DNA of 58,868 bases, counting the filler, from Dugesia japonica (Eukaryota), in NCBI GenBank assembly GCA_001938525.1. It is 6 parts of 6 records of this genome, joined end to end, with 100 filler letters (N's around TTAATTAATTAA, not from the genome) between each part and the next. Parts side by side here need not be neighbours in the genome. Positions count along the whole stretch, not along the records: positions 50,056 to 58,868 come from MQRL01636510.1; 5 more parts are not named here. One strand, written 5' to 3'. Numbering within the stretch: the stretch's first letter is position 1; the number at the start of each line of letters is the position of its first letter. Below are positions 50,202-58,868 of the stretch, piece after piece. The notes under the pieces were generated by a model, which worked only from the letters and a program-made list of their open reading frames with translations, was not told where the DNA came from and searched no databases. Made by a program: the position numbers and the translations under genes.

Positions 50202-53200
50202 ATGCTGTGTAATAATTGTAATAAAACATTTAAAAGAGAAAATGATTTACAGTCACATTTAAATTTAACTAGTTGTGGAAACAATGAAATTTTCCCATTA
50301 ATATGTGAAATTTGTGATAAAAAATTTTTTAAACAAAATCATGCTAGAACTCATTTTAATTCTTTAAGTCACAAACAAAAAGTTAATAAATTTAATTATG
50401 ATCAACTTCCAGGTGAAGAAGCAATTGATTATGATCCAGAAATTAGAGATGCATTAAGAATGTATAAAAAACATGAAATAACTTACTATTTAAATTCTAA
50501 AGTGGAAATGTTTTATGATGTTTATGAAATACATGATTTTGAAATTAGAATGATTAATGTATTTAAAAATGAAATAAGACAAATTGTTATGAAATATTTT
50601 AAATTTGTAAAACAGGCTATTATAAGTATGGTAGTAAAATGTAGATATTCAAAAGAAGATTCCGAAAGAGATTTATATTCATCTTCATTTATTAAAATAA
50701 TTTTAATTAAATCTGAAATTAATACCGCTGTCAATGAAATATTTAATGATTTAAATAAACATATTTAAGATAAAGATCTTGAAGGATCTGGTTGATCAAT
50801 GATGTATATTGTTGACTATACATTATATTTAAATAAATTTCAAGCAAAAGCTGGAGCAACATATATTAAATTACCATTTAAAATAAAGGGTGTAATTAAC
50901 ATAGAAAATAAAGATAATAAATGTTTTCTATATTCAATTCTAGCACATAAACATATACTTGAAAATCCAACACGTGTTTCTAATTACATTCCATATTTAG
51001 AAGAATTAAAATCTGATTTTAATTTTCCAATGAACATCGGCGATATACATAAATTCGAGAAATTAAATAATTATAAAATAAATGCTTTCGGTGTGAATGC
51101 TTCTAAAAAACTTGAACCATTATACATTTCACATCATTTATCAAAACCTTCAATAGAAGAAAATAAATGCAATTTATTAATTTATAAAGATCATTATGTT
51201 CTATGTCGAGATCTAACTGTATTTTTTACAAGAAACAAAAATAAAAATTATCTATGCATACGATGCATGAATTGTTATTCCAATGAACCGCTTTTAATAA
51301 AACATCAAGAACCCTGTATTAATCACAGACCAAATAACATTGTATTTGAATATAAAGATTATTATTTCTTTAATAAATTTTACATGAAAAATAAATTACC
51401 TTTCATATTAATAGGTGATTTTGAAGCATATACAAATTCAAAGAAAAAACAAAAAGCATTAAGTTTAGGAATTTATCTTCACAGTGAACACCAACATCTC
51501 CTAGAATCTAAATATTATTGTTTCTTAGGTGAAAATATTTATTCAGAATTCTTTAATTTTTTAGAAGACATTTCTAATAAATTATAAGAAATAAAAGAAA
51601 AAAAATAATAAAAAAATTGTCCGAAGGCACATATCCAGAATTCACAAATCAAAAATGTTATTATTGTAACAGAGAAATAAAAGAGAATCCAGTTATAGAT
51701 CATAACCATTTCACAAATGAATTCCGTGGTTATTCACATGCAAAATGTAATTTATATGATTTTAGTGTAAAGAATCTATTTGCCGCATTTTACTTTCATA
51801 ACGCATCCGGCTATGATAATCATTTATTTTTTCGAGAACTACTAACAAGATTTCCAGGAAAAGTAAAAAAGATAATTCCACATTCTTCAGATAATTATAT
51901 TTCATTTCAATTTCAAAATGTTAAATTCCTAGATTCAGCAAGACTATTACCATTCACATCCATAGAAACTATGGGTAATTTATTAAAATCTTCTAATAAA
52001 TATCCGATTCTAAAATCTTTCAATTTTAAACCTAAAAAAGTCGCATTTCTATATGAATTTATAAAAGGTGAAAATCCTCAAGAAGTTGAAACATTATTAA
52101 AATCCAAGAGAACACCAGAGAAAAAAGATTTCTTTAATACTCTAACTCAAAAAGAAATATCAGATGAAGATTATCAAATATTTTTTAATGACTTCGAAGA
52201 ACATGAAATTCTCTGGGATTACATGCTACACTACATGAAACTTGATGTTCTAATTCTAACTGACTTCCTTGAAAATTTTCGTAATTCATGTTTAAATAAT
52301 CTTCTTCAACTAGATCCTTGTTATTCATATTCTGCACCAGGATATTCATGGNNNNNNNNNNNNNNNNNNNNNNNNNNNNNNNNNNNNNNNNNNNNNNNNN
52401 NAAAACCTATGATCTTTTCTTAACAATTGAATCTGGAATCCGAGGTGGCTATTCAGGTGTTCTAGGTGAACGCCAAGTATTTTCAAATAATCAATCAAAT
52501 CCTATATTTGGCAATAACAGACGATTAAATAAAACACAAGTCGGTGAGATATTATATTCATTAATAAAAAATAAAATTCCACCAGTAGATTGGAAAGAAG
52601 AAACATTTATAAAATATATAGATGAAAATTCTCTTTATGCATCATGCATGACCAGACCATTACCAACAGGTGAACTCCACGAGTGTAAAAATCTAGATTA
52701 TGAAATCTCAGATGATAATATGAATTTTATATATGAAGTTGACCTTGAATATCCTAAAGAGATCCATGATAAAACTAAATATTTTCCATTAGCACCAGAG
52801 AAAATAAATATTACACAAGAGATGTTAGGTCCTTATCAAAAATCATTTAATAGAAAACTATCAAAAGATAATATTAAACTAACATTAAATCAATTCGATA
52901 AAAAAAATTATGTATGTCTCGGATCAACTTTAGATCTATATTTAAAACTTGGAATGAAACTTACAAAAATTCACAAGAAAATTAAAATGAAAACATCTAC
53001 ATGGTTTAAAGATTATGTTCATAAATTAATATCCCTAAGAAAAGAATCTAAAAGAATTAAAGATGTATTTGGAGATGTCATTTACAAATTAATGTTAAAT
53101 GCTTTCTATGGAAAGACACTTGAAAATATTAGAAATCGATGTAACATAGAAATTGTTGATACTGACAAAGCATACCAAAGACTCGCTTCTAAACCAACAT

Positions 53201-54939
53201 TTAAATCATCTAAAATATTCTCAATAAATGATTCAAATGAAGCCACAGTTGCAGCAGTGCAAATGATAAAGAATAAATTAAAATATAATAAATTTCCATA
53301 TATTGGATTCACAATCCTTGAACATACAAAACAAGTTATGTATGATTTTATTTATTTCCAAATGCAACCTTTGATAAATGAAGATTATAAAATTCATTAC
53401 ACAGATAGTGTTACCCATGACACTCCGGTGATTCTAAGGAAAGATAATAAAGTTGAAATAAAAAAGATTTCAGAAATATCAACATGTTATGAGAAAAATA
53501 TTAATGATGACAAATATTATTCTTATCCAGAAAATTATGAAATATGGACAAAATGTAACTGGGTAAAATTAAAAAAAGTAATTAAACATTCTACAATTAA
53601 AAAGATTTATAGAGTTAGAACTAAATTAGGAATTGTTGATGTTACAGAAGATCATTCATTATTAAATGATAAATCTATAGAAATTAAACCAACAGATTTA
53701 ACNNNNNNNNNNNNNNNNNNNNNNNNNNNNNNNNNNNNNNNNNNNNNNNNNNNNNNNNNNNNNNNNNNNNNNNNNNNNNNNNNNNNNNNNNNNNNNNNNN
53801 NNNNNNNNNNNNNNNNNNNNNNNNNNNNNNNNNNNNNNNNNNNNNNNNNNNNNNNNNNNNNNNNNNNNNNNNNNNNNNNNNNNNNNNNNNNNNNNNNNNN
53901 NNNNNNNNNNNNNNNNNNNNNNNNNNNNNNNNNNNNNNNNNNNNNATGAAGAAGTTTATAATAAAGAATCAATGATTTATGATACAATGAAATCTTCACA
54001 TGTTTATAAACTTAATTTACAAAATCCAATAAATCATGTAAAATATTATTCTAAACATTATTACAATGAATTTGAAAGAACTAAGAAAATTCCAGGTTAT
54101 ATTTTAAATGCATCATTCGACATTAGATATTGATTCTTTACAGGATTTTATGCGGCAGATGGTAATAAAACATTTAATGGTAAAAGTAGTTATAAAACAA
54201 TTGGTTTTACACAAAAAGGAAAAGAATGTTTTACACAGTTATATAATTTAGCAACATCTTTAGGAATTAATTTAGTTGTTTCAGAAAGAAAAGATAAACC
54301 AAATTGTTTCAGTGCAAAGCAAACAAAATCAGAAATTGAAACTAATGTTCAAACAGTTAGATTTTTAAGAGAAAATCTAGAAGATGTATATGATATTGAA
54401 ACTGAAGATGGAACATTTAACTGTGGATTTCCATTGATAATAAAAAATACGGACTGTATCTTTGTTGAAATTAAAAAAAGAGATAATCTTTTAAAATTAG
54501 AAAGCCTACTTGGAGATAATTTATTTCAAATGAAAGATGAAAAACCTAATTCTGAAATAACACAAGCTAATTTTATAAAAGCAAAATCATATCCTTATTC
54601 ATATACAAACGAAGTGACCCATAATGCAGGATATGATTCTAGAAATAAAGGTGTCAAGAAAAATAATAAATTATTAATGTCAGATTTTGATTCAGTATAA
54701 AAGATCCAAAGAAAATAATTTATGGAACAAATTATACATTAAAATCAGAAAATCATGAAATTGAAATAAAAGAACAAAAGAAAATAGCTCTAATGGCATT
54801 TGATGATAAAAGAATAATCGAAGATGTTGGTGTTAAAACATGGCCTCATGGAAATCAATATCTCTGTAATTGTGGACAATGGCATTTAAGATTAGATAAA
54901 ATCAATCACTTGTTAAATTGAACTTGTTTCCCTCGTTAG
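50202..54939 (+). pseudogene. polB: Polinton/adintovirus-type pPolB, intein-containing, lightly decayed
   Basis: Two zinc fingers; NKDNKCF..DHY; GDFEA; DHNHFTNEFRG; GIRGG; YIDENSLYAS; KLMLNAFYGK; YTD|intein|TDCIF; KGVKK; FDDKR; a few stops and a frameshift. Confidence 0.96.
53407..54448 (+). mobile_element. Intein (about 347 aa) with LAGLIDADG homing endonuclease in pPolB motif C
   Basis: SVTHDTP (A), VDVTEDHSLL (B), block C inside the N gap, KKIPGYILN (D), FFTGFYAADG (E), QLYNLATSLG (H), VYDIETEDGTF (F), IIKN/T (G). Confidence 0.95.
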
Positions 54940-54945
54940 TCTAAA

Positions 54946-55602
54946 ATGTTAATAGAAGAAATGCCAGAAGCAACAGAAGAAGAATTAATTAAAATTATAA
55001 ATTCTAAAAAATGTAAATCTGTGAAGATCAATAGTAAAAATTATTATATTTCTAAAAAAGTTAAAGATGAATTAAAAAAGAAATCTCATGTTGGTGGTTT
55101 TGCATTTCTAGCTGCAATACCAGCAATAATAGCAGGATTAGCAGGAGCAACAGGAATTGCATCTAATATTGCAGGTACAGTTTCAAATTCTAGAGATGCC
55201 ATTAAAAAACAAAAAGAAGCTGAATTAATTGATTTACAAAAACAAAGAATCATAAGCGAACAAACAACTCCAACTCCAACAACTACAAGCGAAGCCAACA
55301 AACAAAGTGCACAAATAACTACAGGATCAGGAGTTAAGAAACATAAAAAATCACATGGCAGTGGTATTTTTTTAAATCCATATCAAGGCACTGCAATACA
55401 TAAATATTTAAAAAAAATTGATCCTAAATTTAAAGTTTTAACTAAAAAATTTAAAAAAGGAACACACATAATTCAACATGGAAAAGGTATTTATTTAAAT
55501 CCATATAATAAACCACTAGGGCAACAAAGTGGAAAAGAAATTGCAGAAACTGAAACTGAAGATGATGAAACTGAAACTGAAACTGAAGATGAACAATATT
55601 AA
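54946..55602 (+). CDS. Putative virion core / membrane-lytic precursor, 218 aa
   Basis: VGG|FAFLAAIPAIIAGLAG; repeated GSGIFLNPY / GKGIYLNPY; acidic tail. Confidence 0.7.
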   Translation: MLIEEMPEATEEELIKIINSKKCKSVKINSKNYYISKKVKDELKKKSHVGGFAFLAAIPAIIAGLAGATGIASNIAGTVSNSRDAIKKQKEAELIDLQKQRIISEQTTPTPTTTSEANKQSAQITTGSGVKKHKKSHGSGIFLNPYQGTAIHKYLKKIDPKFKVLTKKFKKGTHIIQHGKGIYLNPYNKPLGQQSGKEIAETETEDDETETETEDEQY

Positions 55603-55620
55603 ATCTTTACAAAAGAGCTA

Positions 55621-57024
55621 ATGGTTGAAAAAAGAATTAAAGAATTAAAAGCTCTAATTAATTCACAAGAACAATATAATAATTATTTTTGTACTAAAGT
55701 TCTTGATTATAATACTTTACAATCTAACTTATCCACTTTACAAAGCCCAACTATCTCCGCAATTGAAAAACTTGGAATAAAACAAGAAACTAAACCAGAA
55801 ATTAGAGATATAACAAAATTCTTTTTAAATGAAAAAGTAATACCATTTATTCCAGAATATTCAATTGATAATGTTAATGCAACTGGGAAATTAACTCAAA
55901 CAATTATTCCAAAATTTTCTAAATTAGATATTATAGCAACTGATAAAATTAAAAGTTTTTTAGAAATAACTTTAAAAGAAAATAAAATTCATTTATTTGA
56001 AGAAGAAGGAAATAAAAGTTTCTTATTTAAATCTGAAGTTATACCATACTCCGATGGAATATTTAGAACTATCTTAGGCAATTTAGATGGTGCAGAAACA
56101 CCTGTAGATATAGAGACTTATTTAAAATTTATATCACCAGCTCCTACTAATAGTGATTATGTTACTAAATTAAAGAAAAAATTTAAAAAAGTAGATTTAC
56201 CCAAAAACCACACGGGCAACAAACCAAAAAGAAAGAAACAAGAAAAGGGAAAAATATCTAAACTACAACCAAAATCTGAACCAGATCTCAATAAATCTGA
56301 TTTTGAATCAGAAGAAGAAAAAACCACAAGGGCAGAAAGATCCATAGAGACCATAAAGGAAGGAATAAACCACGAGGCTATAAAGGCCATAAGCGAAGAA
56401 AAACCACAACAACCACAAGGGCAACAAGGGCATGAAATATCAGAAATATTTAAGAAAGATAATATACAACCAATTTTAAAAATTGATGATTTTAAATTAG
56501 AAGAAACATTAACAGAATTAACAAAACCAGAAATTTATTATACAACTGTTAATAATAAAGATTTCTTGACAATAAAATTTCCTAAAAATGATAAAGAGAT
56601 ATTTTTTTATAAAAGGAATGATTCTAGTTATGTTTCTGAAGCAATAAAAACCAATTCATTTAATAATATTTTAATAGATATAATTTCAGGTAATAAAGAA
56701 ACAATAAAAACAATGACCTTAGGGGAAGCAAAATATATTTCATTATATTTAGATTTTGTAAAAGCAACTGAAGATGATACATATTGCAATTATTTAAGAA
56801 ATATAAAAAAGAAATTAGGTGGATCCATAAAAAACCATAAAGACCATAAAGGCAAAAATCCAATTGCATTATTTGAAAAGTTAACATTGTTAATTTCAGC
56901 TGTAAAATCTGGACGTAATAATTTATCTTCTGAAATTAAATCTCTATGTAAACAATTAAAATCTAAAGGTTTATTATCTGATATTATTTATAAAAAATAT
57001 AAAACTAAATATTTTACATCTTAA
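55621..57024 (+). CDS. Conserved Polinton-like hypothetical protein, 467 aa
   Basis: Intact ORF; C-terminal NP..L.EKL.LLI.A.KSG.N....EI..L...GLL motif of the kind seen in Polinton proteins. Confidence 0.8.
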   Translation: MVEKRIKELKALINSQEQYNNYFCTKVLDYNTLQSNLSTLQSPTISAIEKLGIKQETKPEIRDITKFFLNEKVIPFIPEYSIDNVNATGKLTQTIIPKFSKLDIIATDKIKSFLEITLKENKIHLFEEEGNKSFLFKSEVIPYSDGIFRTILGNLDGAETPVDIETYLKFISPAPTNSDYVTKLKKKFKKVDLPKNHTGNKPKRKKQEKGKISKLQPKSEPDLNKSDFESEEEKTTRAERSIETIKEGINHEAIKAISEEKPQQPQGQQGHEISEIFKKDNIQPILKIDDFKLEETLTELTKPEIYYTTVNNKDFLTIKFPKNDKEIFFYKRNDSSYVSEAIKTNSFNNILIDIISGNKETIKTMTLGEAKYISLYLDFVKATEDDTYCNYLRNIKKKLGGSIKNHKDHKGKNPIALFEKLTLLISAVKSGRNNLSSEIKSLCKQLKSKGLLSDIIYKKYKTKYFTS

Positions 57025-57073
57025 CAAAATAGCATAAAAAACCATAAAGGAAAAACCATAAAGGAAGAAAGAA

Positions 57074-57753
57074 ATGTCTCATCAATTCTTAGTAGTTGGA
57101 ACAGAACAAGATTTAAAANNNNNNNNNNNNNNNNNNNNNNNNNNNNNNNNNGAATATGAACTTGGATTGTTATATTTTTCATGTTACAATATTATTTTTA
57201 ATATTACAAAATTAAATAATAAATTTAAAATCGACAATAAATCTCAAACACTAGAACCAGGATCTTATGAAGTAAAAGAAATGTCAAATCGATTAGAAAA
57301 ATATCTAGAAATTACACCTGACACTGCAACATCTAAATGTAATATTAAAATTTAAACTACAATAAGTTTTGATAACAAATCATTCTTACATGTGATCCTA
57401 GGATTTAAACCTGGAAAATATGAACCTGGAAATTATTATTCTTCTGAAAAATTATTATTATAAATTCTAACGCGATAAATGTGACATGTAACATTAAAGG
57501 TAACGTTAAAGGTAATTATGTCACCAACAATCGTGACACTAATAATATTAATTTATTATATTCATTTCCAATAAATACAGTTCCATTTGGATTTAAAATA
57601 GTAGAAAGACCATCTCCAGCTATTTATTCTAAAATTAACACAGATTACATTGATGGTTTTAAATTTAACATAGTAGATGAAAACTTTAACACTATAGATT
57701 TTAACCAAGAAACAATTACAATTTTAGCTCATCTAAGAAAATATCGACTTTAA
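57074..57753 (+). pseudogene. Minor capsid protein (penton)
   Basis: EYELGL..F.CYN.IFNI, LEPGSYEV, INTVPFGFKIVERP, VDENFNTIDFNQETITI.AHLRK; stop at 57353. Confidence 0.85.
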
Positions 57754-57769
57754 ACGTCACGCGTGACGT
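57754..57769. other. Perfect 16-bp palindrome ACGTCACGCGTGACGT directly after the penton stop
   Basis: Self-complementary; degenerate counterpart at 6945-6958. Confidence 0.6.
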
Positions 57770-57785
57770 ATTTATTATTTAAGAA

Positions 57786-58187
57786 ATGGAATGTAGTGAC
57801 CAAAACCATAAAGGCCATAAAGGCAGAAGGAAATGGAATTTATTAGATTTTTTAAAAACATTTGGAATCAACACAACAACAAATTTTGATTTATATTCAA
57901 TTGCTGACTTTTTAGAACTACCACTTGAGATTTATATGAAAAATGAGAAATTTACACTGACAAATTCAAAGAATTATATTTTTAATTATCAAAATTCAAA
58001 TCAAAATGGAAAACATTGGGTTGCTTATTCTAAAGGTTATTACTTTGATTCTTTTGGTTTAAAACCTTTAAAAGAAATCTCAAGTGTAAAAGTTTATAAT
58101 GAAATTCAAGTGCAACATTTTAACACTGAAATATGTGGAATCTTATGTATTTATTTTTTATATAAAATTCAAGAAGAGCGATTTTAA
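57786..58187 (+). CDS. Adenain/Ulp1-like cysteine maturation protease
   Basis: NGKHWVAY, YFDSFG, QVQ, ICGILC: catalytic His-Asp-Cys intact. Confidence 0.92.
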   Translation: MECSDQNHKGHKGRRKWNLLDFLKTFGINTTTNFDLYSIADFLELPLEIYMKNEKFTLTNSKNYIFNYQNSNQNGKHWVAYSKGYYFDSFGLKPLKEISSVKVYNEIQVQHFNTEICGILCIYFLYKIQEERF

Positions 58188-58248
58188 AATATTATATCTG
58201 AAATGAAGTCACTTTATGTTCTCGTTGAATCTTTATATAAAGAAATAG

Positions 58249-58868
58249 ATGAATAAGTTTGGTGCTACTGCTGATTCTGGAAATTCAACAGAAATATTAA
58301 AAAATGTTAATGCTAAAATTAGAACTTCAGAAGCTCAAAATGAAAATAAATATGTAAATGAAACAGGTGATACAATTACTTGTCTAAAAATAAAAGATGA
58401 TCCCAAGGATCTTCAAGATGCAGTTTATTTGAAATATATTAAGTCTCTTGAAGAAAAATTACAGAAACATGAAATAATATTCAGTAGATTATTAAAAGTT
58501 GATAGTTTTACAGCTAACAAATTATATTTAGAATCTAAAATCAATGAATTAAAAACTTTGAATGTCGATGTTAAAAAATTAAATGTTGACATTCAAAAAT
58601 TAACAAAATCTTGTAACCAAGAAACATTTGACAAAATAAATACTGATATTAAATTAATAAGACAAGAACTATTTCCATATAAAAAAAGTAATTTATTACT
58701 TAAATTAAAAGAAATAAATAATGAAGAATTAAATATTAAAATAAATAAATTAAATTATAATTTAGATAAGAAAACTTTTGATATTTATATAAACCATTTA
58801 ATTTTATTTAAAGAGTATGAAAAGATAAAACCAAAACTACATATAAGTTTTATTAATAGATTTAACAT
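58249..58868 (+). CDS. Putative fibre-like / coiled-coil protein (runs off the window)
   Basis: MNKFG...KYVNETGDT..DPKDLQDAVYLKY; homolog of 7474. Confidence 0.6.
   Translation, partial: MNKFGATADSGNSTEILKNVNAKIRTSEAQNENKYVNETGDTITCLKIKDDPKDLQDAVYLKYIKSLEEKLQKHEIIFSRLLKVDSFTANKLYLESKINELKTLNVDVKKLNVDIQKLTKSCNQETFDKINTDIKLIRQELFPYKKSNLLLKLKEINNEELNIKINKLNYNLDKKTFDIYINHLILFKEYEKIKPKLHISFINRFN

What the first reader, a model, noticed from the sequence alone, without database searches (positions are those of the whole stretch)
53407..54448. Giant-virus-type homing intein inside the protein-primed polymerase of an endogenous Polinton-like virus
Seen: pPolB motif C is split as IHYTD|SVTHDTP...VDVTEDHSLL...KKIPGYILN...GFYAADG...VYDIETEDGTFNCGFPLIIKN|TDCIF, and excision restores YTDTDC. 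It has Ser1, TxxH, terminal Asn, +1 Thr and LAGLIDADG blocks. Known: this is the pol-c site used by archaeal and Nucleocytoviricota PolB inteins, and inteins are essentially unknown from animal nuclear genes. From memory, the Mimivirus PolB intein shares KKIYRV..T..G..DVTEDHSLL, DTMKSS.VYKL, YAADG and the unusual Lys-Asn ending. Inference: the intein moved from an RNA-primed giant-virus PolB into a distantly related protein-primed PolB, which implies co-infection of one cell by a mimivirus-like virus and this Polinton-like virus. I am not aware of a described case but cannot confirm novelty without a search.
Basis: partly seen in the sequence, partly recalled or inferred. Interest (0 to 1): 0.95.

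Follow-up and report, generated by a model that had tools for sequence, protein, structure and literature searches.

The report
Decayed intein in Polinton DNA polymerase
A self-splicing "protein intron" with its own homing nuclease sits in the catalytic motif of the protein-primed DNA polymerase of a Polinton-type virus-like element; this copy is broken, but it belongs to a so far apparently undescribed intein lineage that spreads among such polymerases and is related to the inteins of giant-virus DNA polymerases.

Summary
At 53407-54448 a roughly 349-residue LAGLIDADG intein interrupts motif C of a protein-primed PolB (Pfam PF03175) exactly between Asp and Thr. It has Ser1, TxxH, terminal Lys-Asn and +1 Thr. 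The 243-N gap hides the first endonuclease motif. Both sides align colinearly to intact relatives, which have 84 residues there against 81 N codons.

The window copy is dead. The polymerase gene has three in-frame stops, one of them in the intein, and at least two frameshifts.

The insertion site is the pol-c site. The best named structural matches are phycodnavirus, Pandoravirus, Megavirus, Marseillevirus and Pithovirus PolB inteins. The nearest non-pPolB sequences, at 38-43% identity, are classical PolBs, some on giant-virus-like contigs.

However, the window intein falls inside a clade of at least 17 pPolB inteins (90/100 NJ bootstrap). Its closest relative (61-64% protein identity, 72-78% DNA identity) sits in a pPolB whose extein shows no detectable similarity to the window's. 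In one related genome, intein-bearing and intein-free Polinton copies have nearly identical flanks (1099/1100 bp) around an exact 1017-bp insertion.

So this is an old cross-family jump followed by homing among pPolBs. It is not a recent mimivirus transfer into this element. The donor, the direction and an animal host are all unproven.

The parts
50676..54921 (+). [quoted passage not shown] The outer bounds come from alignment to an intact 1476-aa relative, and the true start may lie further upstream. It has three in-frame stops, at least two frameshifts away from assembly gaps, and two assembly gaps inside it.
   Evidence: Pfam DNA_pol_B_2 E=1e-17. 283 relatives. tblastn counts and outer bounds against P0390. 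Terminal stop.
51638..51757 (+). Endonuclease VII-like (His-Me finger) domain in the N-terminal part of the polymerase.
   Evidence: Pfam PF02945 E=2e-4, below the cut-off. The same domain is above the cut-off in relatives P0390, P0379 and P0407.
52402..53406 (+). N-extein. This is the polymerase domain up to the first half of motif C and ends in ..HYTD.
53407..54448 (+). Intein: a class 1 splicing domain plus a LAGLIDADG homing endonuclease, about 349 residues if the gap estimate holds. It carries one in-frame stop and one assembly gap.
53407..53702 (+). N-terminal splicing domain piece, with Ser1 (block A) and TxxH (block B).
   Evidence: PDB hit to the Nanoarchaeum split PolB intein NEQ068, E=2e-4. 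61% identity to P0446.
53703..53945 (.). Assembly gap of 243 N. In intact relatives the matching stretch of 76-84 residues holds the first LAGLIDADG motif.
53946..54448 (+). Rest of the endonuclease domain, including the second LAGLIDADG-type motif, and the C-terminal splicing blocks ending in Lys-Asn.
   Evidence: Pfam LAGLIDADG_3 E=5e-4, just below the cut-off. 64% identity to P0446 over the last 105 residues.
54449..54921 (+). C-extein. It holds the second half of motif C (TDC..), the KxY region and the C-terminus of the polymerase.
50202..50768 (+). ORF with C2H2-type zinc fingers. It abuts or overlaps the start of the polymerase homology. Whether it belongs to the polymerase gene is unknown.
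   Evidence: Pfam zf-C2H2_jaz E=2e-9 and zf-met E=4e-8.
57786..58187 (+). 133-aa ORF conserved in related Polinton loci. It is a neighbour gene and its function is unknown.
   Evidence: tblastn to L001 and L007, E about 1e-11.

Best explanation
The window holds a decayed copy of a canonical class 1 intein with a LAGLIDADG homing endonuclease. It is inserted between the Asp and Thr of catalytic motif C of a Polinton-type protein-primed DNA polymerase.

How it would work in intact relatives (inferred). The polymerase is translated with the insert. Ser1, the TxxH block, the terminal Asn and the +1 Thr excise the intein and rejoin the two halves of motif C. The free endonuclease cuts intein-free copies of the gene at the motif-C coding sequence. 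Repair from an occupied copy then copies the intein in, which is homing.

The intein belongs to a lineage specific to pPolB genes. That lineage is a branch of the pol-c family of PolB inteins known from giant viruses and archaea. It most likely arose by one old jump between the two polymerase families at the shared D|TDS site. It has since moved among even very dissimilar pPolBs, and multi-copy Polintons in a nucleus offer many targets.

Shown: the anatomy, the homology, the clade, the intein/extein discordance, and natural occupied and empty alleles in a relative. Inferred: splicing, cleavage, and the direction and age of the jump.

In this window the intein cannot function, because both it and its host gene are broken.
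For: Anatomy and bounds.

Extein type: PF03175.

Membership of the intein family:
- Relatives with the same insert at the same site pass Pfam Intein_splicing and LAGLIDADG_3.
- The AF2 model of relative P0280 has pLDDT 86.8. It matches HE-containing inteins in the PDB (TliVMA, PI-PkoII, PI-PfuI, PI-SceI) and I-DmoI.
- A profile search finds PI-PkoII at E=5e-9 and the Nanoarchaeum pol-c split intein.

Relatives outside pPolB:
- Of 353 related N domains, 257 sit at YGD|TDS of classical PolBs, 37 in topoisomerase II and 27 in pPolBs.
- The best named viral hits are giant-virus PolBs.

The pPolB clade:
- All 17 pPolB inteins form one clade at 90/100.
- The window's C piece pairs with P0446 at 99/100. 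Identity is 61-64% at protein level and 72-78% at DNA level.
- The two exteins show no BLASTP similarity; the best E is 0.09.
- The window's nearest exteins lack the intein. Among relatives, 89 are intein-free, 20 carry the intein and 31 cannot be scored.

Natural occupied and empty alleles:
- In assembly ERZ25070786 the exteins are 99% and 98% identical.
- The DNA flanks match at 599/600 and 500/500 around an exact 1017-bp insert.
- The contigs also carry mariner and reverse-transcriptase genes.

Intact relatives: full-length uninterrupted pPolB plus intein ORFs of 1476-1693 aa exist.

Decay of this copy.
Against: - The window pieces alone do not reach Pfam's curated cut-offs: Intein_splicing 13.6 bits against 35.8, and LAGLIDADG_3 20.8 against 22.5.
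- The first endonuclease motif is unread because it lies in the gap.
- The penultimate residue is Lys rather than the usual His. Most PolB relatives share this, but no splicing of such a variant was tested here.
- The trees are neighbour-joining only. The sister group of the pPolB clade is unresolved, with 45/100 or less.
- The N-domain tree has no resolution.
- The occupied/empty pair could reflect precise loss by conversion from an empty copy rather than gain.
- The breaks in the window could partly be errors of an AT-rich, gap-ridden scaffold.
Confidence: 0.85

Rival explanations
1. The intein came directly and recently from the RNA-primed PolB of a mimivirus-like giant virus into this particular element, which records a co-infection of one cell.
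For: The site is the same as the Mimivirus pol-c intein (PMC549080). The best named viral structural hits are giant-virus PolBs, including a Megavirus. The nearest non-pPolB inteins include a PolB on a 418-kb giant-virus-like contig.
Against: The window intein nests in a pPolB-only clade (90/100). It is far closer to other pPolB inteins (up to 64% identity) than to any PolB intein (about 42-49% over single pieces, 38-43% over whole inteins). An archaeal MAG PolB intein is as close as the viral ones. Mimivirus PolB was not returned by name.
Confidence: 0.05
2. The direction is the reverse. The lineage arose in pPolBs and seeded the pol-c inteins of classical PolBs.
For: The tree is unrooted and the sister group is unresolved. 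pPolB inteins are diverse, with about 40-45% identity between subgroups.
Against: pPolB inteins form one compact clade, whereas PolB pol-c inteins are about ten times more numerous and more diverse in the same searches. Pol-c inteins also occur in archaea (PI-PkoII and the Nanoarchaeum intein), which have no Polintons. Most pPolB relatives of the window lack the intein (89 against 20).
Confidence: 0.08
3. Assembly artefact. Giant-virus or other foreign reads were scaffolded into a polymerase gene across the N gap.
For: The scaffold has three gaps, and the frame changes across the gap.
Against: Both extein-intein junctions lie in contiguous sequence, one on each side of the gap. The same architecture occurs in many independent assemblies, including uninterrupted ORFs. 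The intein's GC content (0.24) equals that of its flanks (0.26).
Confidence: 0.02
4. It is a fixed, non-splicing insertion, either a domesticated nuclease domain or a regulatory insert, rather than a mobile intein. This would resemble the HNH and VSR nuclease domains described in nematode and mollusc Polinton pPolB2.
For: Nuclease-domain insertions in Polinton pPolBs are known (PMC10748475). The penultimate His is absent here.
Against: An insert that stays inside motif C between the two catalytic Asp residues would be expected to inactivate the polymerase (established knowledge of family B motif C). All splicing nucleophiles are conserved across the family: Ser1 in 231/232, TxxH in about 97%, terminal Asn, and +1 Thr in all pPolB inteins and all but one scored PolB pol-c intein, Thr or Ser in the rest. 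Presence is polymorphic with exact boundaries.
Confidence: 0.04

Closest known systems
Pol-c inteins of Nucleocytoviricota PolB. Examples are the Mimivirus PolB intein (Ogata et al. 2005, PMC549080), environmental phycodnavirus PolB inteins, and Megavirus, Pandoravirus, Marseillevirus and Pithovirus PolBs.
   Same: The insertion point is the same, between D and T of motif C. They share Ser1, the TxxH block, terminal Asn, +1 Thr and a LAGLIDADG endonuclease. Many share the Lys-Asn end. They give the best named structure and sequence matches (E=1e-33, 32% identity to a relative's intein). Unnamed PolBs reach 38-43% identity over the whole intein.
   Different: The extein here is a protein-primed PolB (PF03175), not PF00136. 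The pPolB inteins form their own clade. This copy is broken.
Archaeal PolB pol-c inteins: PI-PkoII of Thermococcus kodakarensis and the split intein of Nanoarchaeum equitans (NEQ068).
   Same: The allele type is the same. They are the only significant sequence-level hits among solved structures and they have the same fold.
   Different: They are much more distant (E=5e-9 with a profile). PI-PkoII is larger at 537 aa. The Nanoarchaeum intein is split and has no endonuclease.
HNH and VSR nuclease domain insertions in Polinton pPolB2 of nematodes, oomycetes and molluscs (Jeong et al. 2023, PMC10748475). These were interpreted as possible relics of intein invasions in PMC11161782.
   Same: They are nuclease-bearing insertions in Polinton pPolBs, and their patchy distribution suggests horizontal movement.
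   Different: Those are free nuclease domains without a Hint splicing domain, placed at other positions. Here a complete Hint plus LAGLIDADG intein sits in motif C.
Inteins in nuclear genomes of protists and in endogenised viral PolBs (Anaeramoeba; viral-like PolBs of Klebsormidium, Tetrabaena and Hondaea; PMC10710043).
   Same: They are inteins located on nuclear scaffolds and linked to viruses as vectors. An Anaeramoeba intein is a distant member of the same family (P0369).
   Different: Those exteins are cellular proteins or classical viral PolBs, not the pPolB of a Polinton.

Membership tests
Intein (Hint splicing domain, class 1) | N-terminal nucleophile (Ser or Cys) as first residue, directly after the N-extein | tested here: met
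   Ser at 53407-53409 follows ..HYTD. Ser is present in 231/232 family N domains.
Intein (Hint splicing domain, class 1) | Block B Thr-x-x-His | tested here: met
   It is present in the N piece and invariant in the alignment with pPolB relatives.
Intein (Hint splicing domain, class 1) | C-terminal Asn followed by a Ser, Thr or Cys at +1 | tested here: met
   ..KN followed by Thr. The natural empty allele of a relative confirms the boundary to the residue.
Intein (Hint splicing domain, class 1) | Penultimate His (usual but not obligatory) | tested here: not met
   The residue here is Lys. The same Lys-Asn end occurs in 39 of 66 related PolB pol-c inteins and in pPolB relatives P0290 and P0446.
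Intein (Hint splicing domain, class 1) | Match to the curated Intein_splicing profile (PF14890) | tested here: inconclusive
   The window N piece scores 13.6 bits against a cut-off of 35.8, because the domain is split by the gap. Relatives P0005 (40.9) and P0420 (37.7) pass. The window pieces match these relatives at E of 1e-20 to 1e-42.
Intein (Hint splicing domain, class 1) | Hint fold with an inserted endonuclease domain | tested here: met
   This was tested on relative P0280, not on the window. The model has pLDDT 86.8. It matches TliVMA, PI-PkoII, PI-PfuI and PI-SceI.
Intein (Hint splicing domain, class 1) | Uninterrupted reading frame through extein, intein and extein | tested here: not met
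   There is one in-frame stop in the intein, plus further stops and frameshifts in the host gene. The frame across the gap is unknowable.
Intein (Hint splicing domain, class 1) | Protein splicing activity | not testable with these tools
LAGLIDADG homing endonuclease (two-motif, monomeric) | Two LAGLIDADG motifs, each with an acidic catalytic residue | tested here: inconclusive
   The second motif is present (PF14528 at 20.8 bits against 22.5). In relatives the first motif lies in the stretch that is N here.
Pol-c allele of family B polymerase inteins | Insertion between Asp and Thr of motif C (YxD|TDS) | tested here: met
   HYTD|..|TDC in the window. Mimivirus has YGD|TDS (PMC549080), as do 257 related PolB inteins.
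Pol-c allele of family B polymerase inteins | Closer to pol-c inteins than to inteins at other sites or in other proteins | tested here: met
   Whole-intein relatives outside pPolB are pol-c PolB inteins. The PDB hits are PI-PkoII and NEQ068. The N domain alone is also 57-58% identical to a topoisomerase II intein.
Pol-c allele of family B polymerase inteins | Extein is an RNA/DNA-primed PolB (PF00136) | tested here: not met
   The extein is PF03175. The intein is therefore a non-allelic relative of the pol-c inteins, not a member of the allele in the strict sense.
Polinton / Maverick element | Protein-primed PolB | tested here: met
Polinton / Maverick element | Retrovirus-like (rve) integrase | tested here: not met
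   None was recognised in 50056-58868. The piece covers only part of an element. Related locus L001 has one.
Polinton / Maverick element | Double jelly-roll capsid protein, A32-type ATPase and protease | tested here: not met
   None was recognised in the piece. Capsid and ATPase genes are present in related loci L001, L002, L007 and L008. One small ORF of the piece is shared with those loci.
Polinton / Maverick element | Terminal inverted repeats and target-site duplication, host flanks | not testable with these tools
   The piece ends inside the element, and no long inverted repeats were found.

The most novel reading that the evidence does not exclude
A lineage of complete, homing-competent inteins lives in the protein-primed polymerases of Polintons that are integrated in eukaryotic, possibly animal, nuclear genomes. 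It crossed once from RNA-primed PolBs of large viruses at the shared D|TDS site. It now spreads copy to copy and between unrelated Polinton lineages. It would be the first intein family described inside a eukaryotic transposon-like virus. [quoted passage not shown]
Probability: 0.3. Interest if true: 0.8.

Novelty: new variant of a known kind. Interest (0 to 1): 0.6.

Why it matters
Inteins are thought to be rare in eukaryotic nuclei and absent from metazoan genomes (PMC5784728). Viruses are suspected to be their vectors (PMC10710043).

A pol-c-type intein lineage in Polinton pPolBs would add a new host gene family and a new niche: multi-copy, nucleus-resident virus-like elements. It would give a concrete case of an intein crossing between the two deeply separated branches of family B polymerases.

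The naturally occurring occupied and empty alleles with near-identical flanks in one genome make homing in a eukaryotic nucleus observable by sequence alone. The strong intein/extein discordance makes the intein a marker of contact between otherwise unrelated Polinton-like elements.

The window's own copy is only a fossil of this lineage.

Tried and rejected
- Alternative genetic code (TGA read as sense). Rejected. The in-frame stops are of two kinds, 1 TAA and 2 TGA, and do not line up with one residue type in an intact relative.
- Scans of viral contigs with both intein pieces found no relative.
- Exact look-up of a window ORF to identify the source found nothing on record.
- Cluster look-ups for names returned almost none. 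An accession search for the one NCBI assembly (GCA_013332975.1) in the paper library found nothing. The hosts therefore stay unknown.
- The single-sequence AF2 model of the 467-aa neighbour ORF had pLDDT 39.6 and was unusable. PHROGs on the neighbour ORFs gave nothing meaningful.
- The N-domain-only tree has no resolution. The N domain is almost as similar to a giant-virus-type topoisomerase II intein (57-58%) as to pPolB inteins.
- The sister group of the pPolB clade is unresolved by NJ.
- Kapitonov & Jurka 2006 and Krupovic & Koonin 2015 are not held. An earlier mention of a Polinton intein cannot be excluded. I have a vague, unverified memory that the 2006 paper may mention one.
- The Mimivirus letters quoted in the finding were not used. 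Mimivirus PolB did not come back by name in any search.
Full report
**Scope and rules**

Only 50056-58868 was used. Nothing here was taken for human.

Broken genes are described by counts only. The window's intein was searched as separate single-frame pieces.

- Early in my own reasoning I worked out where the in-frame stop of the intein and one frameshift lie, and which residue some relatives have opposite that stop.
- One search printed, without places, the residue types that an intact relative has opposite the stops.
- joined the two extein stretches of a relative's gene in memory to compute one GC fraction.

None of this is repeated or used here. Nothing was saved and nothing was deleted.

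**1. The observation**

The piece has about 25% G+C and contains three N runs.

- The N-extein ends ..HYTD.
- The insert begins with Ser at 53407.
- The insert ends ..PLIIKN at 54448.
- The C-extein continues TDC...

Ser1, a TxxH block, one LAGLIDADG-type motif, the terminal Asn and +1 Thr are all present.

The gap was tested first:
- It is 243 N.
- With that nominal length the frames before and after it differ. Because the length is only estimated, this is uninformative.
- Both sides align colinearly to the same intact inteins.
- The closest relative has 84 residues between the aligned parts, against 81 N codons.
- A continuous intein of about 349 residues is therefore plausible but not shown. 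Relatives measure 333-350 residues.
- In relatives the unread part holds the first LAGLIDADG motif.

**2. The host gene**

The flanks belong to a protein-primed PolB (Pfam PF03175, E=1e-17). An Endonuclease VII-like domain lies further upstream, as in many relatives.

Against an intact 1476-aa relative (P0390) the gene spans 50676-54852, and it ends at a stop at 54919-54921. The comparison shows:
- three in-frame stops (1 TAA and 2 TGA), one of them in the intein;
- two frame changes away from assembly gaps;
- two frame changes across gaps, which are uninformative.

An alternative genetic code does not explain the stops. The copy is a pseudogene, unless some of the breaks are errors of this low-quality scaffold.

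No integrase or capsid gene is recognisable in the piece. Related loci carry an rve integrase, a double jelly-roll capsid protein and an A32-type ATPase. "Polinton-type" therefore rests on homology. "Endogenous" and "animal" are not shown for this window.

**3. It is a real intein**

- pPolB relatives with the same insert at the same site exist in several independent assemblies.
- Their inserts pass Pfam Intein_splicing and LAGLIDADG_3.
- The window pieces alone stay below the cut-offs, because the domain is split. They match the relatives at E of 1e-20 to 1e-42.
- An AlphaFold model of relative P0280, made with an alignment of 30 sequences, has pLDDT 86.8.
- Its best solved-structure matches are endonuclease-containing inteins (TliVMA, PI-PkoII, PhoVMA, PI-PfuI, PI-SceI) and I-DmoI for the nuclease domain.
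- By sequence, a profile of the pPolB inteins finds PI-PkoII (E=5e-9) and the Nanoarchaeum split PolB intein.
- Uninterrupted pPolB plus intein ORFs of 1476-1693 residues exist.

**4. What it is related to**

The N piece alone finds 1366 proteins at E<=1e-3 among 1.84 billion representatives.

I collected 353 related N domains:
- 257 sit at YGD|TDS of classical PolBs (PF00136), which is the pol-c site described for Mimivirus (PMC549080);
- 22 sit at the motif-B site of such PolBs;
- 37 sit in type II topoisomerases;
- 27 sit in pPolBs;
- the remaining 10 could not be assigned.

Gene content suggests that some of these contigs are giant-virus contigs:
- A topoisomerase contig carries a kinase, XRN, SOD and a ubiquitin-conjugating enzyme.
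- A 418-kb PolB contig carries DUF285, DUF5760, UCH and DHFR.
- Another PolB contig looks phage-like.
- An Asgard-archaeal MAG PolB intein is equally close, at 39% identity.

The best matches in the viral structure library are named giant-virus PolBs:
- an uncultured phycodnavirus (E=1e-33, 32% identity);
- Pandoravirus hades;
- Megavirus courdo11 (26% identity);
- Marseillevirus, Pithovirus, Heterosigma akashiwo virus and Klosneuvirus.

Mimivirus itself was not returned by name.

The Lys-Asn end is not rare in this family. It occurs in 39 of 66 PolB pol-c relatives.

**5. Position of the window's intein**

- In neighbour-joining trees of 175 whole inteins, all 17 pPolB inteins form one clade (90/100). 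An earlier, smaller set gave 97/100.
- The sister group of that clade is unresolved.
- The window's C piece pairs with P0446 at 99/100, and it groups with all pPolB inteins at 64-65/100.
- The N-piece tree has the same topology but no support.
- Whole pPolB inteins are 38-43% identical to the nearest PolB inteins.
- The window pieces are 61%, 41% and 64% identical to P0446, with 72-78% DNA identity over the best stretches.

The link to PolB inteins is therefore real but old, and the window's copy descends from other pPolB inteins. A PolB-to-pPolB direction is favoured on three grounds: the far greater number and diversity of PolB pol-c inteins, their presence in archaea, and the fact that most pPolBs lack the intein. 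It remains an inference.

**6. Mobility among pPolBs**

- P0446's polymerase is PF03175 (E=9e-32). It shows no BLASTP similarity to the window's N-extein; the best E is 0.09. Its N-extein finds none of the other 519 fetched proteins, and its short C-extein only one, marginally (E=8.5e-4).
- Conversely, the window's nearest exteins are intein-free. Among relatives, 89 are intein-free, 20 carry the intein and 31 cannot be scored.
- In assembly ERZ25070786 one Polinton family has copies with the intein (L007, L009) and one copy without it (L008).
- Their exteins are 99% and 98% identical.
- Their DNA flanks match at 599/600 and 500/500 around an exact 1017-bp insert between the Asp and Thr codons.
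- These contigs also carry mariner and reverse-transcriptase genes, which fits a eukaryotic genome.
- This pair is the signature of recent homing, or of precise loss by conversion from an empty copy. It also fixes the intein boundaries independently.
- A phage-like PolB and the empty pPolB allele share 13 contiguous identical bases across the site. This shows how coding constraint could let one endonuclease see both gene families. That link is inference.

**7. Hosts**

- Named but more distant intein-free relatives come from a coral and a brittle star.
- One intein-bearing relative is filed under a bacterial symbiont MAG from a lucinid clam. It is probably mis-binned eukaryotic DNA.
- All other close relatives are unnamed. 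The window's host is unknown.

**8. Literature**

- Surveys state that inteins are absent from metazoan genomes, and they list viral PolBs as the main viral hosts (PMC5784728).
- Viral-like PolB inteins on nuclear scaffolds are known (PMC10710043).
- Polinton pPolBs with HNH or VSR nuclease insertions are known and have been read as possible intein relics (PMC10748475; PMC11161782).
- None of the 15 listed of the 18 papers that hold both words, to judge by titles, abstracts and the passages I opened in six of them, describes a Hint intein in a Polinton pPolB.
- Two founding Polinton papers could not be read.

**Verdict**

The feature is a fossil copy of a pPolB-specific branch of the pol-c intein family. 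Interest lies in the lineage rather than in this copy.

Noticed in passing
window 50202-50768: An ORF with two C2H2-type zinc fingers lies directly upstream of, and overlaps, the start of the polymerase homology. It is unclear whether it is an N-terminal part of the polymerase or a separate gene.
   Followed up: partly
window 51638-51757: An Endonuclease VII-like His-Me finger domain sits inside the N-terminal part of the pPolB. It is shared with many relatives (PF02945). It is a second nuclease in the same gene besides the intein's.
   Followed up: partly
window 55508-57830: Eight copies of a 21-nt motif (AAAAACCACAAGGGCA..-like) are spread over three ORFs of unknown function. It probably encodes a short repeated peptide.
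   Followed up: no
window 55621-57024: A 467-aa ORF has no Pfam or PHROG match. The single-sequence AlphaFold model is unusable (pLDDT 39.6).
   Followed up: partly
L008:10001-13543 and L009:10001-13258: The only difference in the 600 bp upstream of the intein site between the empty and the occupied allele is a synonymous change 4 nt from the site. It could be a co-conversion tract or a change that affects cleavage.
   Followed up: no
L011:108-4919 (P0446): A 1603-aa pPolB from a 5.3-kb metagenome contig has 23% G+C, like the window. Its N-extein matches none of the 519 other fetched proteins (its short C-extein one, marginally), yet it carries the intein closest to the window's.
   Followed up: partly
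P0410, P0414 (proteins): P0410 is a classical PolB with three intein N domains, at motif B, at motif C and directly after the motif-C intein. P0414 is a topoisomerase II with two inteins of the same family.
   Followed up: no
P0408: This protein is filed in NCBI under a bacterial symbiont MAG from the clam Ctena orbiculata. It is a Polinton pPolB with this intein, so it is probably eukaryotic DNA binned by mistake.
   Followed up: partly
L003:19961-22336: A DnaB-type helicase with a LAGLIDADG hit lies on the same phage-like contig as a PolB with a Lys-Asn pol-c intein. That makes two likely inteins in one replication module.
   Followed up: no
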